A stretch of DNA of 63,543 nucleotides, the filler included, from Octopus bimaculoides (taxonomy: Eukaryota): the NCBI RefSeq assembly GCF_001194135.2. It is 6 parts of 5 records of this genome, joined end to end, with 100 filler letters (N's around TTAATTAATTAA, not from the genome) between each part and the next. Parts side by side here need not be neighbours in the genome. Positions count along the whole stretch, not along the records: positions 6,907 to 25,100 come from NC_069001.1; 5 more parts are not named here. One strand, 5' to 3'. Each line of letters begins with the position of its first letter. Position 1 is the stretch's first letter. Shown here one piece after another: positions 6,907 to 19,681 of this stretch. The position numbers and the translations under genes were made by a program. A model generated the notes under the pieces. It made no database searches. It saw only the letters and a program-made list of their open reading frames with translations, and had not been told where the DNA came from.

Positions 6907-7250
6907 GATGCCTCTGTAATTATTTGTATCTAAAGCGTCACCTTTACCTTTGTAGCAGTTGACTATGATGCTGCTACACCAGCCATTGGGTATGACTCCT
7001 TCGTGTATCACCTGGTTCGTAATACGGGTGACTAGGCTATAGCCAACACTGCCAGATATTTTGAGCATCTCTGCAGTGATTCCTGATGGGCCGGGGGCTT
7101 TCCCGGTCTTCATACTCTTAATTGCTTTATCTACCCTGGTACTATCAACTCGGATAGCTGGTCCCTCTATTGGGTCGACATACGGCAGGCTCTCTTTCTC
7201 CCATTCATTCTCTTTATTAAGCAATCACCTTCAATTGTCAGTACTTATTT
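6907..7250 (-). mobile_element. RTE-clade LINE fragment (start of RT)
   Basis: VDKAIKSMKTGKAPGPSGITAEMLK..IPNGWCSSIIVNCYKGKGDALDTNNYRGI is the canonical RTE pre-RT/RT1 region; open until the gap. Confidence 0.9.
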
Positions 7251-8159: not shown

Positions 8160-9447
8160 TTATCTAGGTGACCATGTTAGTAGTGGGGGAGGGTGTGCTG
8201 AAAGTGTAGCTGCTAGAATAAGAATAGCCTGGGCAAAGTTCAGAGATCTCTTACCACTGCTGGTGACAAAGGGCCTCTTGCTCAGAGTAAAAGGCAGACT
8301 GTATGACACATGTGTATGAACAGCCATGCTACATGGCAGTGAAACATGGGCCGTGACTGCTGAGGACATGTGTAAGCTCGCAAGGAATGAAGCCAGTATG
8401 CTCCGATGGATGAGTAATGTCAGTGTGCATACCCGACAGAGTGTAAGTATCTTGAGAGAAAAGTTGAACCTAAGAAGCATCAGTTGTGGTGTGCAAGAGA
8501 GACGATTGCGCTGGTATGGTCATGTGGCGAGAATGGATGAGGATAGCTGTGTGAAAAAGTGCCACACCCTAGCGGTTGAGGCANNNNNNNNNNNNNNNNN
8601 NNNNNNNNNNNNNNNNNNNNNNNNNNNNNNNNNNNNNNNNNNNNNNNNNNNNNNNNNNNNNNNNNNNNNNNNNNNNNNNNNNNNNNNNNNNNNNNNNNNN
8701 NNNNCCTGTGGAAGAGGTAGGCCCAGGAAGACCTGGGATGAGGTGGTGAAGCACGATCTCCGAACATTAGGCCTCACCAAGGCAATGACTTGTGACCCAG
8801 ACCTTTGGAAATATGCTGTGCGTGAGAAGACCCGGCAAGCCAAGTGAAACCAAACTCCAAGGCCTCTGCCAGGGACGTAGCCAGCCCACTTATGCGTTCC
8901 ATTCCTTCATTGGACACTAAACTCCGCTTGCGAAGACCTGTTGAGGCAAGTGAAATCGAAATCAAACTAAATTTGACGACTGGCACCCATGCCAACATCT
9001 CTCATTGTACACTAAACTCGGCTTGCAAAGACCTTTTGGGGCAAGCGAAAGCGAAATCGTGATGGCACCTGTACCAGTGGAGCACTAAGAGCGTGATCGT
9101 TACCAATGTCGCCTCCCTGGCACTTGTGCCGGTGGCACATGAAAAGACATTCGAGCGAGATTGTTGCCAGTGCCGCTGGACTGGCTCCTGTGCAGGTGGC
9201 ACATAAAATAAACCATTTCGAGCATGGCCGTTGCCAGTACTGCCTGACTGGCCTTCATGCCGGTGGCACGTAAAAGCACACACTACACTCTCAGAGTGGT
9301 TGGCATTAGGAAGAGCATCCAGCTGTAGAAACTCTGCCAAATCAGATTGGAGCCTGGTGTAGCCACCTGGTTCACCAGTCCTCAGTCAAATCATCCAACC
9401 CATGCTAGCATGGAAAGCGGACGTTGAACAATGATGATGATGATGAT
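8160..9447 (+). mobile_element. RTE-clade LINE 3' portion (end of ORF plus 3'UTR with (ATG)n tail)
   Basis: LGD..ARIRIAWAKFRDLLPLL..KGRLYDTCV*TAMLHGSETWA..RLRWYGHVARM..GRGRPRKTWDEVVKHDL. The 3'UTR ends CCATGCTAGCATGGAAAGCGGACGTT..(ATG)n. Confidence 0.9.
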
Positions 9448-9587: not shown

Positions 9588-12090
9588 AGTCAATCCAAAG
9601 ATGAACAAGCAAGAAAAAACAATGTGAGGATGTGGAATAAGTACAGTGTTATTGGACGCTCAGGAAAGAAAAGAAAAGAAAGGATTTCATGTTTTGAGTG
9701 GAGCTCTTCATCAGAAATACAGAAAAAGTTCAAAGAAGGGAAGATGGAGAAAGAAAATCACCAACGATACAAATGCAGTCACATACTGAAATGACCGGAA
9801 GGGAAAGGGTGAAGAAAAAGTTCTTTGAAAGACAGGAGAGTGCAAGAGAAGGAGGGATATGTATGGATGTGCGTGATGATAGCACGTGTATGTGCATGTG
9901 GTTGTGGCTGTTTTTGTATGTGTGTGGTTGGACTTAGTATCATTTTAGGTCATAGGAAGAATTTATAGCAAGAATTTTGGTAGGAGAATGGTCAGTAGAA
10001 AGGTACTGGTAGTTTGAAGTATGTGTATGTATATGTAGTGTGTGTGTGTGTGTGTGTTTTGTTTGCAGTGTGTGAGTGTATGGGTATATGTGTACACATG
10101 AGGTTGGCTGTGGAGTAACTGTACGTTACTGTGTGCGTGTGTGTGCTTGTATGTTCAGGTGTGTGTGTACATGTATGTATAATTGTGTGCGTGTATGTAT
10201 GAGTGAGCTGTGTGTGTATGGGAGGTATGTGTGGGTTCATTTGTGTGTGAACAAGAGGTTGTGTAGGGGGTATGTGTATTTTTTTGCGCGTGTATCCATG
10301 TGTATGTGTATGCGTGTGTGCATGGGTTGTGTATATGTGCATGTATGTGTGTGTGTTTGTGCCCATGTGTAATTGTGTGCGTGTCTGTATGGGTGTGTAT
10401 TGAGTGTTGGAGGTACATGTGCGAGTGTTTGTATGTGTGTGTATGTGCAAGCATGTGTATAGGCGTGAACGTGGAGATGTCTGGTTATGTGTGTACGCTT
10501 ATGTGTGTGTGTGTGTGTATAGGCATGTGTCTGTGTGGATTATGTATCTGTGCATTCCAGTGCATGTGTATGTGTGTGCACATGTATATGTGTGTGTGCG
10601 TGTGTAGTATGTGGGAGGTATATGTGTGTGCATGGGTGCATGTGTTTTTTCGTATGTGTGCGTGTATATAGAAATAAAAGCAATAAATTATAAAAAGTAA
10701 TTTTGAAAGGAGATGAAGAAGTTAATGCAATATAAAATGGCGCAATTACAAACAAAAAAATGAAATAAGGTTGCTTAGTTGCAGGAGGTGTAGAGGCAGT
10801 CAATAGGAGGAGGGGGTTGTGTTTAGTCCAAAGGGATAGTTCTTCAAGTCGTGAGTGTGTGGATCCGTGGTGCAGAGCGAGAGCGAGGCCAAAGACAGAG
10901 ATGTTACAAGGGGAGTGGTTGGCCAAGCAGAAGTGATGGGTGACGGGGGTGATCGAACGTAGCCAAACATCCCATAGATGTTCAGTGAACCCGTCGGCCC
11001 TACATATAGTTTACCACAGAGGTTGCATCTAATACAGTATATGAGGCTNNNNNNNNNNNNNNNNNNNNNNNNNNNNNNNNNNNNNNNNNNNNNNNNNNNN
11101 NNNNNNNNNNNNNNNNNNNNNNNNNNNNNNNNNNNNNNNNNNNNNNNNNNNNNNNNNNNNNNNNNNNNNNNNNNNNNNNNNNNNNNNNNNNNNNNNNNNN
11201 NNNNNNNNNNNCGGTTAGGGGAGGGAGAAAGGGCGGTGGTGCGATCAATTTGACATGCGTGGGCAAAAGTATTTTGGACAAGGGTTGAGGCGGGCAAGGT
11301 ACTGGGACTGGGTCTCAAAATCCTGGTCCTGGCTGCACAAGCGTCAGAGGTGGAGGAACTAGGAGTAGGGGATGGCCCGTTTGGTGTGGAAGGGATGAGG
11401 AGGAGAAGTTGAGGTAGAGGTGGGAATCTGTGGGTTTGAAGAAGGCGGTGGTGAGAGTGGGAGGGGTGGTCAATAATAAGAGAGATATCAAGGAAGTTAA
11501 CAGAGGTGTTAGAGATAGAAGTGAATTGGAGAGAAGGGTGGAAGTTAGAAAGGAATGAGATGATGTGGCACAGTTGTTCACGGGAAAGGGAAGTGACACC
11601 TATACAGTTGTCTATGTAGCAACAGTATAGCTCTGGGGTCGGACCGGAGAATTGGGAGAATGCTTGGGCCTCAATGTGGCCAACAAAGAGGTTGGTGAAA
11701 TTGGGGCCCATTCTCATTCCCATTGCGACAGCTCTGCCAAATGAAGAAGGGTGGAGGTGCTGGATGTGGGATCAGGGCGATGGTCAAGGAAGTATTGGAG
11801 GGCTAAGAGACTGTCGTTGTGGGGAATCAGTGTATAGGGATTTGATATCCAAGGTGAAGAGAAGGTATGAGGGGCTGGGAGGGAAGGAAAAGGAATTGAA
11901 GAGGCAAAGGGCGTGATTAGTGTCATGTATGTGAGATGGGAGGGCAGCAACTAAAGGGGACAGGATGCGGTCAAGGTATTTGGAAATGAGTTTGGTGGGG
12001 CAATTACAGGCAGAAATGATAGGGCGGCCAGGTTTATGTATTTTGGGAAGGAAATAGATGGTGGAGGTACGATCTCTTCAGCACAGGTAA
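9588..12090 (-). mobile_element. Penelope-like element (RT + GIY-YIG endonuclease), degraded
   Basis: YFLPKIHKPGRPIISACNCPTKLISKYLD; MGPNFTNLFVGHIE..YIDNCIG..FHPSLQFT..VNFLDISL; LIYCIRCNLCGKLYVG. The terminal region is interrupted by a ~800-bp CA/TG low-complexity tract (~9880-10660). Confidence 0.85.
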
Positions 12091-12531: not shown

Positions 12532-13540
12532 TTGGAATTTACAAAAAAAACAAACAAACAAAACAAAAGACGAAGACAGGTGTGTAAACAACAAACATGT
12601 ATTAGGACCACTGATGAGGTCACAGAAGTGTGACGAAAGAACTCTGGCCGAAATAGGATTAATGTAATGTAATATAAAGCTGAAACAAATTAACACCAAA
12701 TATACAGTGCATGTATTTTTATTGGCTAAACTGGCAGTATGACCATCCCCAAGTACAATAACATATATATATATATATATCTTCACAAGAGTGATTGAAA
12801 TAAATGGCGATTGTGGAACGTACGCACGCACACATCAGATGAAATGGACGAGTGTGCGAGAAGGGGTGTATTGTCATGTATACGTACATACATCTTTTTT
12901 GTATGTATGTGAGCGTGAGAGAGAATGCCACTTAGGCATCTCTCTTTCTCATACGCACACATACATACGAAAAAGATGAATACATATGTATTTATGTATG
13001 TACATATACATGACAACACACCCCTTGACTGACTGGCGCTCTCTCTCTCTCAAAAACACACACATACATAAATTTATACGAACGTACTTACAAAGACACG
13101 TGTGTATGTGATAGAGAAATGAGGAGCGAGAACGTTGCAAACAATGAATGAAAAACATGAATGAAAAAATCGTATAAATAAAAGCCCTTGTACCGTATAT
13201 TCAGATTTATGAACTTAGTAAATATTTCTTTCAGTAATGTATCATAGTTGTTTGCAAATAATGAATTAAAACCATCAAAATAGAGAGTGAGAAATTTTGC
13301 AAATAAAAACAGAAAATTTTGCTGTTGCTACGTCCATACCAGAAGTTGACATTGAGAAACCATTTTAAAGAAGTGAATCATATATATATATATATAAAGC
13401 AATATTATTTACTTTTACGAAAAAAAAAACAAAAAAACTGAAGACCCTATAATGTATCAGAGGTCAAATTATTCATGCATCCTTTTTCGCGTGAAAAGCG
13501 AATACACACAGGTCTATGCTATTAAAAAAAAAACTGAGTG

Positions 13541-13587
<47 letters not shown>

Positions 13588-13725
13588 GTATGTGTGTACT
13601 GGGAAGACAGAGATACAACATGCTGTAAAAATTAAACTGTAAGTAACTGTTATTTAAATACACGAAAAAAATTATTCTATACCGAATTTCTTCGCCGTTT
13701 GTTTTTCCCATCAATAAAGTAATTT

Positions 13726-13732
13726 TATAAAG
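13726..13732 (+). promoter_or_regulatory. Candidate TATA box of the H1-like gene
   Basis: TATAAAG about 150 bp upstream of the ATG, with CATCAAT ~15 bp further upstream; the region is AT-rich, so this is weak. Confidence 0.35.
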
Positions 13733-13873
13733 CGAAATTCACTTATTGTATAACTCTTGGAGAATCAACACTTTAGCTGAGGCTGCCTGTTGCAGTCAAC
13801 TACGTCCGTGTGTTGCTAATTTCAAGCTGGCTTCAGTCGCCGCTCTACTAGTAGCGTAGTTTTGTGATGAAAG

Positions 13874-14224
13874 ATGACAGACACTACCAACAACACGAAA
13901 TCAATCAGAAGAAGCACACTAAAACACCCGAGATACTCAGAAATGGTAATTGCTGCTATATCAAACCAAGACAAGAACAGATGCTCCAGAAGAGAAATTA
14001 TCAAATACATCATATCGAACTACAACGTTGGAGACAAAATCCAGTTAATTAAACTCCACGTGAAGCGTGCCTTGAACGTTTGGGTGACGAAAGGTATACT
14101 TTCAGAAACAAGGCGCTGCTCAGGCCATGTCAGCACCAACAAAAGGAAACTGATGCACAAAATGAAGAAAACTGGAAAAGTAACACCTTCAAAGTTGGAT
14201 AATTTGAAAACAACAGAAACTTAA
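13874..14224 (+). CDS. Divergent linker histone H1-like protein, 116 aa, with a very short C-terminal tail
   Basis: Winged-helix globular domain: KHPRYSEMVIAAI..CSRREIIKYIISNYNVG..LHVKRALNVWVTKGIL. Intronless and followed by a histone stem-loop. Confidence 0.8.
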   Translation: MTDTTNNTKSIRRSTLKHPRYSEMVIAAISNQDKNRCSRREIIKYIISNYNVGDKIQLIKLHVKRALNVWVTKGILSETRRCSGHVSTNKRKLMHKMKKTGKVTPSKLDNLKTTET

Positions 14225-14248
14225 TAAAATTTGATTATAACATAAAAA

Positions 14249-14264
14249 GGCCCTTTTAAGGGCC
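14249..14264 (+). terminator. Histone mRNA 3' stem-loop (SLBP site)
   Basis: AAAAA-GGCCCT-TTTA-AGGGCC-ACCAA: a perfect match to the metazoan histone stem-loop consensus, 24 nt after the stop codon. Confidence 0.92.
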
Positions 14265-17200
14265 ACCAACGCCATTTTGATTTTATACTCCTACAAAATG
14301 AATGCGATCTCTGGACTATCATTCTTTCCTCTATGCTTAAAATTTAAGTCTTTGTAAAGTATTTTTTTTTTGCATTTAAATCTTCCCGTTTTTGTTTGTT
14401 TTGACAATATTTTATTTATATATCTTCGTTGTATGAGTTCATTTTCTCAAGTTCGCGTGATGTAACACCTTCCAATTTCTGTGGAAAACGATTTGAAAAC
14501 ATGTCTTTCAATCTAGGTTGTTAAATTTGACATTTATTTTACTAGCAACAAAAATTCCAACAGTCATGAATTAGTTCACACGTTTCTTTTAGTGAAATAC
14601 TAGATGAATCACACTTGATTTTGTTCTTCGAAACCTATCAACCGTGAATCTGCGGACCTACGATTAAGGGCGTCCCAGCTATTAGAAAAATAGATTCTTG
14701 AGGTGGGTGAATTTAGTAATCTCTTGTAAGCATTCTGGCTATGTCCCTAGTCCGAAAATAATTTCCAGTCCCCGAATCCATACAAGGGGATATAGATACT
14801 GTCCTTTCATTGATAATCCATTACAAAAAATAAATTTAATATGAAGTCACTGCAGGTTGAAGATGCCATTTGATTCCGTCAGAAACAAGAAATGAGGTAA
14901 ATCGTGCTATTTTCTAAAATAGTGATAAACAGCAATTAGTAGAATGCTTTTTAAAAAATTCTATGTTCATAATTTCACTATTACACTCAGGGCATATTTG
15001 AAATGTTGGGTAGTAAAGCTATTCTATGGAGAATATGACCTATTGATAGCAATTTGGTTTAAAAAGACGAAAAATTTTAATCGTTCTTTGTAGCATCTGA
15101 TGAAATTAGCACTGACAAACCCTTCAAAGACATCTAATCTTAGGGAAGAGAACGAGGTCCCTGAAATATATAATGTATTTCAAGAGTTTCCCAAAACTTG
15201 GGAGAAAAGTCAGAGGTGTTAATCTTATGCCATAAAAGAAGCTGTCGAATATTCCTAACAAAAATAAGTGAAGGAATCTGCTTTGGTTTTACGTTACTTG
15301 GCCTGACTAGAATTCCTGGTATCTAAATACACCAAAATCAATTTCGCCTTTCAAGTACTGAAGTCAATGATATTCATTAACTCCCTTCCCTCTAAACTGC
15401 TGGCCTTGTACTTAAGTATCGGCAAGATCGTATCGAAGAGAATGCTTTGCAATATTTCTTGCTGTTTTTTACGTTCTGAGTTTATATAGCTCCGTGCTCA
15501 ACTTTCCTATTCATCCCTTAGGAACCAAATAAAGCAACAGTCATGTACATCCCTCCCATCAAGAACTTAGGCCTAATCTTTGTATTGACAATGCTACAAA
15601 GTATGTGAGCTGGCCTGTCGGAACAAGATCGGTAAATTTTGATGGCATGCGGGTGCACTTATTAAAATTTACAAGGGTAGATCTACAGGCATGGAAGTGT
15701 CAGTGGCCGGACTTGTCTGAGATGTGTAACAAGACCACAAAACTATATTGCTTGCACTCACCCAGTGTCCATAATTTGCAAACTTGGGGACTTGTGTTAA
15801 ACAGCTGCTACCACATTTACGATTGATCTGTAGATCAACTGAGTCGATCGAAGATCAACTCGTTTCCTTCCTTAGGCAAGAAAGAGGGAAGAGTCATCCT
15901 CTTCCTGCAGGCTATGACAAAGGAAATTAGTGTGCTGAACAAAGCTAATTTTGTAGACTGTTCTAACCTAGATTTTTTTCATATTCGTTTTTTTTTTGTT
16001 GCTCGGGTCAAACCTTTCACTTCTGACAGCTAATAGCATGATAGTGCCACTTTATCTTGTCCTTATATATCTAAGACTACATATCTTCGCATATCTTTTT
16101 TTTCAAAGTCAGTAGCGTTCCGTTTGAGGGAAATTTGGGTGCTGTTTCTAACAGGCTCAACGAGTGAATACAAGATGACGTCCGCCGATTCTTTTATTTT
16201 TTAGCTCGAAAGTAGTGTTGCTGCTTATTCCAGGATAGCAGACATGCTGTAGACCAAAGGCCAAAACCTTCAGGGATCGTGCACTCCGCATATTATCTTA
16301 TATATCCTTTCATAAACCGGTAGTGTGTGATTTGAGACATATGGCTGCTATTTCTAGCAGATTGAACGATCAAGTAGAAATATTTTGTCTAACTCTAACA
16401 TTTACAAGGTGACAGTGAAAGGTTGTGCAGAGAAAAAAGTGTTTGAGGGAGATGATCGACTGACATGTGAATCCTATTGGCAAATGATCTCATATTTACG
16501 AAATATTGTTTGATTATCAATCACCCCACGTCCAAGAATAAGGTACTTGTTGATCAGAATTTTTTTTAGGATAGTTGTGGAAATAATGAACAACCATATC
16601 TTGGCTGAGTTAGTTCCAAACATCAAAGTCGACAACTTTTCAGTAAGAGTAACTCTATGAGTTCAAATTCCGCCCAGGTCGACTTTGCCTTTCGGTCGAT
16701 GAAATCGACTATCCCGCTTCCCCCAAATTTCAGGCCTTGTTGCCTATAGTAGAAAAGAAAGAGTAGCCGGTGCTCGTTGAAATAATTTCACTGAATAAAA
16801 GAAAAATAATGAAGAGAATTCGGCGCACATGCTAGGAATAACAGCCAAATCTCACAAATACTTTGATTCCTTTTAACTTTTAGAAAAATTGAAATTTTTT
16901 CTAAAAGTTTCGACATATACGCTGCATATGTAATCAATCTACTAGCTACACATGCATACATATATTTGTACAGATACGAAACAATTCTAAATTGCTTATA
17001 ACATCTTCACAAATATATAAATCATTATCTTCTAATATCCATGTACCTCGCAGAACTTCAAACCGTGAGTTGTGGGGTCACCTTCATGCCAAGGGAATGA
17101 TCTAAGGAGGTGCGGTAGTCCAGGTTTTTGTAGAGGACCAGTGTGGTTAATAATATCTAAGAGGGGAAAAGGGTAAAGATTCCCTTTGGTCATGAATGAC

Positions 17201-17615: not shown

Positions 17616-18293
17616 TTAATACCAATTTGAATCCGATGACGTATTCTTACGGTATCGATATTCTTTACCATCCTGGTTATATTTGTACACATATTTAGCA
17701 GGAAAATATTCCATGTTTAAGCGATAATGGCGAAGATGTAGAAGTAGATGTCTTTCAAGCGTCTTTTTGTCCATAACTAGTCTTTGTTTCTCAGCTGGCA
17801 CTGTGTCAGGTATAACATTCTTCTCAATTGGTTGTATTTCTTTGCGAATTATGAACTCACCATTGTCTTTGAGTAAACAGTATTCAAAGTCTTTTTCTTC
17901 TGGATAACCATTTGGGAAAGTTATCGGTGTTATCTTTATCAGATGTTTTACTTTATTTAACATTTTGTTAACGCTTGGTGTGTTTTTCAGCACAACTTTT
18001 TGGTCTTGAGGACCGGTAAGATTGAGAGCGAACATCGTAGACTTTTCTTTTTGGGGTCTGCCCTTCAAAGTTTTTACTCGAGTTACCATGTGTAACATAG
18101 AAGGTTCTACAGGAGCAGCTGTTTCAGACTTGTTTAACATCAGCTCTTCTCGTAAAGGCTGTGCCCATTTCATGGCCTTGCTTGCCATTTTCTCCTTTTT
18201 GCCTACAAGCCTGAATCGAACTGAAGAATACATGACAGGGCTTTGATTCAAAAGACAACATCTAAATATTGCAAAAAGATTCTGGGACGCCAT
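17616..18293 (-). CDS. MRPL30: Mitochondrial large-subunit ribosomal protein L30 (uL30m), single coding exon, 225 aa
   Basis: LHMVTRVKTLKGRP..EK..VVLKNTPSVNKMLNKVKHLIKITPITFPNGYP..CLLKDNGEFII matches the uL30m core. The N-terminus is basic and presequence-like. Candidate AATAAA signals at 17458-17463 and 17298-17303 (- strand). Confidence 0.93.
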   Translation of the reverse strand: MASQNLFAIFRCCLLNQSPVMYSSVRFRLVGKKEKMASKAMKWAQPLREELMLNKSETAAPVEPSMLHMVTRVKTLKGRPQKEKSTMFALNLTGPQDQKVVLKNTPSVNKMLNKVKHLIKITPITFPNGYPEEKDFEYCLLKDNGEFIIRKEIQPIEKNVIPDTVPAEKQRLVMDKKTLERHLLLHLRHYRLNMEYFPAKYVYKYNQDGKEYRYRKNTSSDSNWY

Positions 18294-18779: not shown

Positions 18780-19681
18780 GGTAAATATGAAGAATCTTGC
18801 CCAACGACAAATTAAACAATAAGTTTTTTAGGGTAAAATAGGCGCGTATATTACGAAAAACGTATTAAAAACAGGGCAATCTAACCGTTTCAGACATTTG
18901 AATTTTAGGAGGGTTCCGAGTACAATTTGTGAAGGAAATTGTTCGGAGACCTGAGATGAGGTGTAAGTACCTCAAGCAGTATATGGTGAGGTATCTGTTC
19001 ATTAAGTCTATTCCGAATCATGCTGAACGTTTCCATCGCTTTCTTACGAAGAGCAGCAAACTGTATCTGGGACCCTCTAAAAAAGGGGGATATATTTGAA
19101 ACGGGGTGATCCTTCGTTTTAACTCGAAAAATGTAAACAATGTATTCGGTAGTTTCCGTGACCACCTGTTGTCTTGTCAACTCTCAGTTAACCTCTGTCT
19201 GTTGTTCTTCTATCTGTGTGCGTGCTTGTTCCTTCGTGTGTTTGTGTGCTTGTTCTTATTTGTGTGTGTGCGTGCAACACATAAAAACATAACAGGCATA
19301 CACACACACATACACAGAACAAGCACACACGCACAACCCATTAGCTTTCTCTTCCCAATTTTACAGAAGATGGCCTGAAACGGTAAGCTTACTCTATTTT
19401 TTGTTACTTTTTTGTAATATACACGTTTATTTTACCGTAGAACATTAGGCAAATATAAAGCGTATGCACACTGGTTAGGGTTAGTTTTAGGCTATAGTTC
19501 TGGAGTTAGGTGGTGTGTGCATGCGTTTTACCTTCGTCTGCAACCCTCATGAAAATGCGAATGTTTCTGAAACGGTTACTTTGCCCTAATTTTTATTCCG
19601 TTTTTCGTAATCCACATGTCCATTTTACCAGAGAAAACTTTTTTCTTTCAAATTTGTCGTTGTGAATGATTCATATTTACC
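18780..19681. mobile_element. Element bounded by ~135-bp imperfect inverted repeats (MITE/fold-back or HINE-like)
   Basis: 18780-18915 (GGTAAATATGAA..CAACGACAAATT..GGTAAAAT..TTACGAAAAACG..AGGGCAA..TAACCGTTTCAG..GAGGGTT) matches the reverse complement of 19542-19681. Confidence 0.6.
19367..19382 (+). other. Candidate 16-nt micro-exon
   Basis: TTTCTCTTCCCAATTTTACAG|AAGATGGCCTGAAACG|GTAAGC: good acceptor and donor, but it lies inside a repeat-like element. Confidence 0.25.

What the first reader, a model, noticed from the sequence alone, without database searches (positions are those of the whole stretch)
13874..14269. Solitary, nearly tail-less, Cys/Trp-containing histone H1 variant that keeps a perfect replication-dependent stem-loop
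Seen: an H1 winged-helix domain followed by only ~30 aa of tail (one TPSK motif, no long Lys/Ala/Pro region), a degenerate beta-hairpin (TRRCSGHVST in place of TKGTGASGSF), two Cys and one Trp, an intact histone stem-loop, and no other histone gene in the 63 kb. Established: canonical H1s have ~100-aa Lys-rich tails, and Cys-containing H1-derived sperm proteins (PL-I) and orphon H1 genes occur in bivalves. Inference: this may be an undescribed cephalopod mini-H1, possibly germline or spermiogenic. A perfect stem-loop beside a strongly diverged protein argues for a maintained gene rather than a decayed copy.
Basis: partly seen in the sequence, partly recalled or inferred. Interest (0 to 1): 0.72.

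Follow-up and report, generated by a model that had tools for sequence, protein, structure and literature searches.

The report
Conserved tail-less octopus linker histone
Octopus genomes carry a lone gene for a miniature linker histone H1 that lacks the usual long lysine-rich tail, yet it has been kept intact by selection in at least three species, so it is a working gene whose role and expression remain untested.

Summary
Window 13874-14224 (+) is an intronless 116-codon ORF with a significant linker-histone domain (PF00538, E 1.4e-13). Only about 30 residues follow the domain. A histone 3' stem-loop lies 24 nt after a double stop codon (RF00032, 33.2 bits against a cut-off of 34, E 2.7e-6). 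No other histone gene lies in the 18-kb piece.

It is not a decayed copy. Intact 116-codon orthologues with the same stop and stem-loop occur at the syntenic site beside uL30m in Octopus vulgaris (98% aa) and in a third Octopus-like species (94%). dN/dS is 0.03-0.19. The odd wing and tail (codons 74-116) shows 1 amino-acid change against 10 codons with synonymous changes. The 3' UTR, stem-loop and next 47 nt are identical to O. vulgaris.

AlphaFold predicts the three H1 helices but no beta-hairpin, whereas a canonical H1 control gives one.

The gene is absent within 10 kb of uL30m in Argonauta. The protein already exists as an unnamed UniRef prediction but is unannotated in O. vulgaris, and I found no literature on it. 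Expression, including the germline idea, is untested.

Verdict: a real, selectively maintained, Octopus-restricted H1 variant, a new variant of a known kind.

The parts
13726..13732 (+). TATAAAG, a candidate TATA box 142 nt upstream of the ATG (inferred promoter element)
   Evidence: Read directly from the sequence. The surrounding block is conserved in the third species, L001. It is absent from O. vulgaris, where the upstream region is rearranged. Function not tested.
13766..13873 (+). Conserved 5' leader / proximal upstream element, homologous to the 108-bp unit that is tandemly amplified in O. vulgaris
   Evidence: About 88-90% identical to both orthologous loci at aligned sites. O. vulgaris has 12 copies. 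A 51-nt core recurs near uL30m in Argonauta. It occurs once in the window. Its predicted RNA fold is no better than shuffled sequences, z = +0.5.
13874..14224 (+). Mini-H1 coding sequence: 116 codons plus stop. N-terminal 17 aa, GH1 helical core about 18-73, altered wing 74-89, short basic tail 90-116
   Evidence: ORF. PF00538 E 1.4e-13. Orthologues 98% and 94% identical with dN/dS 0.03-0.19. AlphaFold helices 21-31, 39-49 and 56-73. Foldseek top hits are H5/H1.0.
14249..14264 (+). Histone 3' stem-loop: 6-bp stem GGCCCT/AGGGCC with loop TTTA. The Rfam match spans 14244..14289
   Evidence: RF00032 33.2 bits, E 2.7e-6. The same element scores 33.2 and 32.0 bits in O. vulgaris and the third species. 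It is the minimum-free-energy hairpin.
14265..14311 (+). ACCA cleavage context and invariant downstream block, the candidate U7/HDE region. It contains a second inverted repeat, CATTTTG/CAAAATG, at 14273-14279 / 14294-14300
   Evidence: Zero mismatches in 94 aligned sites against O. vulgaris over 14225-14320, whereas the next 380 nt are 87% identical. Second hairpin predicted, z = -2.9 for the whole 3' segment. No purine-rich HDE core was recognised, so its function is inferred.

Best explanation
This is a functional, single-copy, intronless linker-histone variant gene restricted, as far as sampled, to Octopus. It encodes a 13.4-kDa basic protein (pI 10.5) made of the three-helix H1 globular core, a remodelled and probably non-hairpin 'wing', and a basic tail of about 27 residues in place of the usual ~100-residue Lys/Ala/Pro tail.

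Shown: protein-level purifying selection, and conservation of a replication-dependent-type 3' end (stem-loop plus downstream block).

Inferred, step 1: the mRNA ends by SLBP/U7 cleavage after the stem-loop rather than by polyadenylation, so the protein is made mainly while DNA is replicating.

Inferred, step 2: the protein binds nucleosomal or linker DNA through the retained helix-3 and basic residues. Lacking the long tail that neutralises linker DNA, it cannot condense chromatin the way canonical H1 does. It would therefore act as a weakly condensing, dynamic or competing linker histone in the cells that express it. Which cells those are is unknown.

The confidence given refers to 'functional, selectively maintained H1-variant gene with a histone-type 3' end'. 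The competitor or open-chromatin mechanism alone I put at about 0.3.
For: - Domain and fold: PF00538 E 1.4e-13. PDB sequence matches are H1.0/H5. AlphaFold gives three helices with pLDDT about 90. Foldseek top hits are H5/H1.0 globular domains, TM 0.62-0.69.
- Orthologues: an intact 116-codon copy lies at the syntenic site 2.7-3.4 kb from uL30m in O. vulgaris, and another in four Logan contigs of a third species.
- Selection: window vs O. vulgaris has 14 synonymous and 2 conservative nonsynonymous changes, dN/dS 0.034, binomial P 3e-8. Window vs the third species gives 0.19, P 0.001. 13 of the 16 differences from O. vulgaris are at third codon positions.
- Wing and tail: codons 74-116 show 1 amino-acid change against 10 codons with synonymous variation.
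- 3' end: the stem-loop is retained in all three species. The 3' UTR, stem-loop and 47 nt downstream have 0 mismatches in 94 sites against O. vulgaris, while synonymous sites (dS 0.22) and the farther flank (87%) have diverged.
- No hidden tail: no Lys-rich frame lies downstream, and the stem-loop is 24 nt after the stop.
- Basic residues: most positions used by GH5/GH1 for DNA contact align with K or R here. This rests on the alignment plus my own knowledge of the GH5 mutagenesis literature.
Against: - There are no expression data of any kind. The protein collection lacks Octopus RNA-seq contigs even for the housekeeping neighbour uL30m, so absence there says nothing.
- The gene is not annotated in the O. 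vulgaris assembly.
- In O. vulgaris the TATA-containing upstream block is missing and is replaced by a 12 x 108-bp array, so the promoter is uncertain.
- The stem-loop scores 0.8 bit below Rfam's gathering score.
- No purine-rich HDE was recognised.
- An AATAAA overlaps the stop codon.
- The beta-hairpin wing that contacts DNA in canonical H1 is not predicted, although a canonical control with the same alignment gives it at pLDDT about 95. Two basic positions (GH5 K40 and R73 equivalents) are lost. Nucleosome binding is therefore not assured.
- The gene is absent near uL30m in Argonauta, so it is young or mobile.
Confidence: 0.8

Rival explanations
1. A decaying orphon or pseudogene: a stray copy of a canonical H1 gene that lost its tail by deletion and is drifting.
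For: The gene is solitary and sits in TE-rich DNA. Its globular domain is only about 37% identical to canonical ones, which are about 65% identical to each other. The wing is degenerate. It is unannotated in O. vulgaris.
Against: Three species keep the same 116-codon frame and stop. dN/dS is 0.03-0.19 with P down to 3e-8. The most aberrant part, codons 74-116, is the most constrained. The 3' signals are invariant.
Confidence: 0.03
2. An assembly or sequencing artefact: a normal long-tailed H1 truncated by an indel or mis-join.
For: The window has many short N gaps elsewhere.
Against: Three independent assemblies give the same stop codon: the window, GCA_951406725.2, and four Logan runs. The stem-loop follows the stop after 24 nt, and no Lys-rich frame exists downstream.
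Confidence: 0.01
3. A germline or sperm nuclear basic protein of the H1/PL-I lineage. It would be expressed in spermatids or oocytes, with the cysteines forming disulphides in condensed chromatin.
For: Two conserved Cys. Orphan, fast-diverged H1 variants are often germline-specific in other animals, for example a wasp H1 variant (title listed; the rest is my own knowledge). Stem-loop histone mRNAs are stored in oocytes in some animals (own knowledge).
Against: The protein is only moderately basic, with 22% K+R, little Arg enrichment and no long basic arms as in PL-I. Cys37 also occurs in canonical-type H1s. Strong purifying selection is unlike the rapid evolution usual for sperm proteins. There are no tissue data.
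Confidence: 0.15
4. A co-opted winged-helix protein that no longer acts as a linker histone. Examples would be a DNA- or RNA-binding regulator, or a secreted or antimicrobial histone-like peptide, that merely keeps histone-type mRNA processing.
For: The canonical wing is lost and a 3-residue insertion is present. Two DNA-contact basic positions are lost. There is a weak forkhead similarity, E 0.005, below threshold. An unidentified O. bimaculoides 'H15 domain-containing protein' was detected in octopus skin mucus. No link to this gene was shown.
Against: The best matches by sequence and by fold are all H1/H5 globular domains. The histone stem-loop is under strong constraint, which ties expression to histone metabolism. 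No mini-H1 peptides appear in the held, truncated supplements.
Confidence: 0.12
5. The conservation reflects a non-coding element, such as an enhancer or lncRNA, and not a protein.
For: The adjacent 5' and 3' non-coding blocks are also conserved.
Against: Differences within the ORF are concentrated at synonymous third positions: 13 of 16 against O. vulgaris, with 14 synonymous and 2 nonsynonymous. The reading frame and stop are kept in three species.
Confidence: 0.01

Closest known systems
Canonical invertebrate linker histones ('H1-delta-like' of molluscs and annelids) and vertebrate H1.0/H5
   Same: They share the PF00538 globular domain with the conserved HP-YSEM, SR and KYI motifs and helix 3. 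H1.0/H5 are the best PDB sequence and fold matches. The intronless gene with a 3' stem-loop matches canonical invertebrate H1 genes such as L015 and L016.
   Different: The helical core is only 33-45% identical to them. The GTGASGSF hairpin is replaced. Trp sits in helix 3. There is no ~100-aa Lys/Ala/Pro tail, with 116 aa against 180-250. The gene is solitary rather than in a histone cluster.
Bivalve 'orphon' H1 genes (Mytilus; Eirin-Lopez et al. 2002, 2004, cited in PMC4106214)
   Same: Both are H1 genes located apart from the core-histone repeats in a mollusc. Both have an H1.0/H5-like globular domain and a retained stem-loop (own knowledge; the references are listed).
   Different: Those encode full-length H1s with long tails and a canonical wing. 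This one is tail-less with an altered wing and is confined to Octopus.
PL-I and other H1-derived sperm nuclear basic proteins of bivalves
   Same: They are H1-derived, mollusc-specific and may contain unusual residues (own knowledge).
   Different: PL-I keeps a canonical winged helix flanked by long, very Arg/Lys-rich arms. The mini-H1 has neither. Expression is unknown.
The isolated globular domain GH5/GH1 used in vitro, and short-tailed variants such as Arabidopsis H1.3
   Same: Like GH5 alone, the mini-H1 is essentially a globular domain. GH5 alone binds the nucleosome but does not condense chromatin, and short-tailed H1.3 binds dynamically (own knowledge). This is the basis of the proposed mechanism.
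   Different: GH5 is an experimental fragment with an intact wing. H1.3 still has a ~60-aa basic tail and is polyadenylated. No natural animal H1 of this design is known to me.

Membership tests
Linker histone H1/H5 family (PF00538) | Significant match to the globular (H15) domain | tested here: met
   51.3 bits against a cut-off of 22.4, E 1.4e-13, residues 18-84. H1.0/H5 E 3e-9 in PDB.
Linker histone H1/H5 family (PF00538) | Three-helix bundle of the winged-helix fold | tested here: met
   AlphaFold helices 21-31, 39-49 and 56-73, pLDDT about 90. Foldseek top hits are H5/H1.0, rmsd 1.7-2.7 A over 59-65 residues.
Linker histone H1/H5 family (PF00538) | C-terminal beta-hairpin 'wing' (K-GTGASGSF-K) | tested here: not met
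   The motif is replaced by TRRCSGHVSTNKRK. No strands are predicted and pLDDT is below 50 from residue 85. A canonical H1 with the same alignment gives E77-81/E88-91 at pLDDT about 95. Caveat: only two sequences in the alignment inform the variant wing.
Linker histone H1/H5 family (PF00538) | Long (~100 aa) Lys/Ala/Pro-rich C-terminal domain | tested here: not met
   27-32 residues follow the domain. The whole protein has 3 Ala and 2 Pro. The stem-loop is 24 nt after the stop.
Linker histone H1/H5 family (PF00538) | Binds the nucleosome at the dyad or linker DNA | not testable with these tools
   Only alignment-based retention of most basic contact positions is available.
Replication-dependent (stem-loop) histone genes | Conserved 16-nt 3' stem-loop with A-rich 5' and ACCA 3' flanks | tested here: met
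   RF00032 33.2 bits, E 2.7e-6, 0.8 bit under the gathering score. It is identical in O. vulgaris and the third species and is the minimum-free-energy hairpin.
Replication-dependent (stem-loop) histone genes | Histone downstream element that pairs with U7 snRNA | tested here: inconclusive
   The 47 nt after the stem-loop are invariant against O. vulgaris, but no purine-rich core was recognised and no Octopus U7 sequence was available.
Replication-dependent (stem-loop) histone genes | Intronless coding region | tested here: met
   A single uninterrupted ORF with an in-frame stop just upstream of the ATG.
Replication-dependent (stem-loop) histone genes | Residence in a histone gene cluster | tested here: not met
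   No core histone and no second GH1 in the 18.2-kb piece or in the 20.7-kb O. vulgaris locus.
Replication-dependent (stem-loop) histone genes | Non-polyadenylated, S-phase-coupled mRNA | not testable with these tools
   No transcript data. AATAAA occurs only overlapping the stop (14223) and at 14829.
PL-I / H1-type sperm nuclear basic proteins | Very Arg/Lys-rich extensions flanking the globular domain | tested here: not met
   K+R is 22% overall. The N-terminal 17 aa has a net charge of +3 and the tail +7.
PL-I / H1-type sperm nuclear basic proteins | Sperm- or spermatid-specific expression | not testable with these tools
   No expression data.

The most novel reading that the evidence does not exclude
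Octopus evolved a natural 'globular-domain-only' linker histone. It would be made in S phase through a histone stem-loop mRNA, with the DNA-condensing tail deleted and the wing rebuilt into a new, invariant motif (TRRCSGHVSTNKRKLMHKMKK). It would act as an antagonist or placeholder for canonical H1 on newly replicated chromatin, for example in rapidly dividing embryonic or germline cells. No such class of linker histone has been described in animals.
Probability: 0.25. Interest if true: 0.7.

Novelty: new variant of a known kind. Interest (0 to 1): 0.5.

Why it matters
Linker histones are thought to need their long basic tail to bind stably and fold chromatin. A natural H1 that has discarded the tail and the canonical wing, kept the histone-specific mRNA 3' end, and stayed under strong purifying selection would be a ready-made experiment on what the globular domain does alone in vivo. 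It also shows that such short, non-polyadenylated histone-type genes escape annotation. This one is missing from the chromosome-level O. vulgaris annotation, so H1 variant repertoires in molluscs are probably under-counted. The lineage restriction, with a long branch followed by tight constraint, fits a gene that acquired a new function in the Octopus lineage.

Tried and rejected
- Close homologues: the word-indexed search of 5.8 billion proteins gave only one, P0001. The exhaustive search of 1.84 billion representatives gave no other relative above about 45% identity. High-scoring multi-domain hits score by summing several GH1 domains.
- Identity of the Logan runs SRR11869384/85/90/91: the accession is in no held paper. 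The contigs include promoter, SINE-like and intergenic DNA, so they look genomic and give no expression evidence.
- Using absence from RNA-seq-derived proteins as expression evidence: rejected. Even the housekeeping neighbour uL30m of Octopus is present only from genome assemblies.
- Third homologue search with a GH1 profile: it returned only canonical 'H1-delta-like' proteins of other phyla or classes, many of them truncated models, and no named Octopus H1. The P0012 and P0016 source organisms remain unknown.
- An Octopus canonical 'Histone H1-like' sequence was taken from a paper supplement instead. It is 36% identical over 59 aa.
- The proteomics lead A0A0L8I4T3 could not be matched to this gene. 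Its sequence is not held, and no mini-H1 tryptic peptides appear in the truncated supplements.
- RNA structure in the conserved 5' element: no better than shuffled sequences.
- Rfam miRNA hits in the piece are far below their gathering scores and lie on TG/TA microsatellites, so they are artefacts.
- Weak Forkhead and Pox_F16 Pfam hits are below their cut-offs.
- Orthologues beyond Octopus could be looked for only by synteny with uL30m. No tool searches whole cephalopod genomes.
Full report
**What is there**

Window 13874..14224 (+) is a 116-codon ORF. An in-frame TGA lies two codons before the ATG, and the ORF ends in a TAA-TAA double stop.
- Residues 18-84 match the linker-histone globular domain PF00538 at 51.3 bits (cut-off 22.4), E 1.4e-13.
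- The best solved-structure relatives by sequence are H1.0 and H5, E 3e-9.
- The protein is 13.4 kDa with pI 10.5. It has 16 Lys and 10 Arg but only 3 Ala and 2 Pro. Cys sits at 37 and 82 and Trp at 70.
- Only about 27-32 residues follow the domain.
- Twenty-four nt after the stop lies GGCCCT-TTTA-AGGGCC (14249-14264), flanked by AAAAA and ACCAA.
- Rfam RF00032 scores this stem-loop 33.2 bits, E 2.7e-6. That is 0.8 bit under the curated gathering score. It is the only such match in the piece.
- No core histone gene and no second H1 domain lies in the 18.2-kb piece.

The stem-loop is consensus-like rather than demonstrably 'perfect'. 'Solitary' can be stated only for 18 kb. The TPSK motif is not conserved (see below).

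**Is it a maintained gene?**

The word-indexed protein search found one close relative, P0001. It is 116 aa, 94% identical, and comes from four ~2.2-kb Logan contigs of runs SRR11869384/85/90/91. These contigs are collinear with the window from 13395 to 15413 and again at 16751-16855. They look genomic.

The neighbouring intronless ORF at 17616..18293 (-) is the mitochondrial ribosomal protein uL30m, with PF00327 E 1.2e-12. Its homologues gave syntenic loci in three places:
- Octopus vulgaris (88% aa; GCA_951406725.2, OX597834.1)
- Argonauta hians (71%)
- an unidentified ENA contig (53%)

In O. vulgaris an unannotated, intact 116-codon orthologue lies 2.7 kb from uL30m in the same relative orientation. 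It is 98.3% identical in protein.

Nei-Gojobori counts:

| Comparison | Synonymous | Nonsynonymous | dS | dN | dN/dS | P (this few nonsynonymous if neutral) |
|---|---|---|---|---|---|---|
| window vs O. vulgaris | 14 | 2 (K44R, I47V) | 0.216 | 0.007 | 0.034 | 3e-8 |
| window vs third species | 10 | 8 | 0.154 | 0.030 | 0.19 | 0.001 |
| third species vs O. vulgaris | - | - | - | - | 0.14 | 2e-5 |

Thirteen of the 16 differences from O. vulgaris are at third codon positions. The constraint is therefore on the protein and not on an overlapping non-coding element.

The most aberrant part is the most constrained. Codons 74-116 (altered wing plus tail) show one amino-acid change against ten codons with synonymous variation. 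That single change is T104M in the third species, and it destroys the TPSK site.

All three copies end at the same double stop and keep the stem-loop, at 33.2, 33.2 and 32.0 bits. From the stop to 47 nt past the stem-loop, the window and O. vulgaris have 0 mismatches in 94 aligned sites. The next 380 nt are 87% identical.

Pseudogene, artefact and 'hidden long tail' readings are therefore excluded for practical purposes.

**How diverged is it, and how widely distributed?**

The exhaustive search of 1.84 billion representatives found nothing between the 94% orthologue and ordinary H1s at 30-45% identity. The top multi-domain hits score by summing several GH1 domains.
- Canonical invertebrate GH1 domains are on average 65% identical to each other but only 37% identical to this one.
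- An Octopus 'Histone H1-like' sequence printed in a proteomics supplement is 36% identical over 59 residues.
- No mini-H1 and no GH1 domain lies within +-10 kb of uL30m in Argonauta or in the more distant contig.

The pattern is a long stem branch followed by tight constraint within Octopus.

The identical protein (P0175) is already in UniRef and MetaClust without a name. It is therefore a predicted but uncharacterised database entry. That, together with 88% uL30m identity to O. vulgaris, suggests the window is another Octopus species, probably O. bimaculoides. This is inference and was not tested.

I found no paper on an Octopus or cephalopod H1 variant of this kind.

**Structure**

With a 61-sequence alignment, AlphaFold2 predicts helices 21-31, 39-49 and 56-73 at pLDDT about 90. 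It predicts no beta strands, and pLDDT falls below 50 from residue 85.

Foldseek's best PDB matches are H5 and H1.0 globular domains on nucleosomes, with TM 0.62-0.69 normalised to the target and rmsd 1.7-2.7 A.

As a control, a canonical H1 (P0023) modelled with the same alignment gives the three helices plus the hairpin E77-81/E88-91 at pLDDT about 95.

In the alignment the canonical K-GTGASGSFK is replaced by TRRCSGHVSTNKRK with a 3-residue insertion, and Trp70 replaces a small residue in helix 3. Cys37 is shared with several canonical-type H1s, so only Cys82 is peculiar.

By alignment, most basic positions known from GH5 work to contact DNA are kept as K or R. These are the equivalents of H25, R42, R47, K52, K69, K85 and R94. 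The equivalents of K40 and R73 are not kept. This uses plus my own knowledge of the literature and is an inference.

**Likely mechanism**

Shown:
- a protein-coding H1-domain gene under purifying selection
- a histone-type 3' end that is itself under strong constraint

Inferred:
- The transcript is cleaved after the stem-loop by the SLBP/U7 machinery, so synthesis is coupled to DNA replication or to stored histone mRNA pools.
- The protein binds nucleosomal or linker DNA through the helical core and its short basic tail.
- Without the ~100-residue tail it cannot neutralise linker DNA and condense chromatin as canonical H1 does. It would therefore be a dynamic, weakly condensing or competing linker histone.

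The isolated globular domain of H5 behaves this way in vitro (own knowledge).

Weak points:
- no expression evidence
- no recognisable purine-rich HDE
- an AATAAA overlapping the stop
- a non-canonical wing
- an uncertain promoter

On the promoter: the window and the third species share a TATAAAG at 13726-13732. O. vulgaris lacks that block. Instead it has twelve 98%-identical copies of a 108-bp unit homologous to window 13766-13873, abutting the ATG.

**Germline or sperm idea**

Nothing tested bears on it directly. The modest basicity, the lack of Arg-rich arms and the strong purifying selection differ from typical sperm nuclear basic proteins. I keep it as a minority possibility.

One lead could not be resolved. 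An O. bimaculoides 'H15 domain-containing protein' (A0A0L8I4T3) was quantified in O. vulgaris skin mucus and was more abundant in senescent animals (PMC11431876). Its sequence is not in the held text, and mini-H1 peptides were not found in the truncated supplements.

**Verdict**

This is a real, selectively maintained, apparently Octopus-restricted linker-histone variant lacking the C-terminal domain and the canonical wing, with a replication-dependent-type 3' end. It belongs to the H1 family by its globular-domain sequence and helical fold, but it fails two of the family's usual features, the long tail and the wing. It meets the stem-loop criterion of replication-dependent histone genes but not cluster residence. 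It is a new variant of a known kind. It is moderately interesting now, and would be more so if it proves to be expressed and to antagonise canonical H1.

Noticed in passing
L005 13724..15019 (O. vulgaris OX597834.1); homologous to window 13766..13873: Immediately upstream of the O. vulgaris mini-H1 ATG lies a tandem array of 12 x 108 bp at 98% identity. The unit is the single-copy 5' leader of the window gene. O. vulgaris lacks the TATAAAG block (window about 13640-13760) that the window and the third species share. A duplicated ~90-bp segment flanks an insertion with terminal inverted repeats further upstream (L005 about 15030-15600).
   Followed up: partly
L006 19851..19901 (+) (Argonauta hians): A 51-nt core of that 5' element (CCTGTTGCAGTC..GTCCGTGTGTTGCTAAT) recurs at 86% identity, 9.2 kb downstream of uL30m in Argonauta. 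It is in the opposite orientation and is followed by an (AGT)n microsatellite, not an H1 ORF. It could be a remnant of the gene's 5' end, a conserved regulatory element or a dispersed repeat. Which one is unresolved.
   Followed up: partly
window 14273..14300: A second conserved inverted repeat, CATTTTG...CAAAATG, lies just downstream of the histone stem-loop. The only two substitutions in the third species in this block fall in its predicted loop. Its role is unknown, and it sits where an HDE would be expected.
   Followed up: partly
window 17616..18293 (-): An intronless 225-aa mitochondrial ribosomal protein uL30m gene, PF00327 E 1.2e-12. It is conserved as a single exon in O. vulgaris and Argonauta and lies head-to-head with a queuine tRNA-ribosyltransferase (TGT) gene in related loci.
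   Followed up: partly
window 24748..25026 (+): A 92-aa ORF with a THAP zinc-finger domain, E 3.2e-7. It is probably an exon or a domesticated or transposon-derived fragment.
   Followed up: no
window 6907..7224 (-), 8326..8847 (+), 10800..11723 (-), 15413..16751: Reverse-transcriptase-like and other transposon-like ORF fragments are interrupted by short N gaps. A ~1.3-kb stretch with SINE-like sequence is present in the window but is only ~146 nt in the third species.
   Followed up: no
window 12892..12976, 13536..13604, 10306..10373, 19247..19325: Rfam miRNA-family matches (MIR1523, mir-297, mir-466 and others) score 25-40 bits against gathering scores of 76-249 and lie on TG/TA microsatellites. 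They are low-complexity artefacts.
   Followed up: yes
proteins P0002 (746 aa), P0005 (486 aa), P0008 (508 aa): The database holds predicted proteins with 3-7 tandem, mutually diverged H1 globular domains and no Lys-rich tails. Their source organisms are unknown. They may be real multi-GH1 proteins or fused models of tandem gene arrays.
   Followed up: no
PMC11431876 supplements (O. vulgaris skin-mucus proteome): An O. bimaculoides 'H15 domain-containing protein' A0A0L8I4T3 (OCBIM_22034700mg) is reported as more abundant in senescent octopus mucus. Whether it is this mini-H1 could not be determined.
   Followed up: partly
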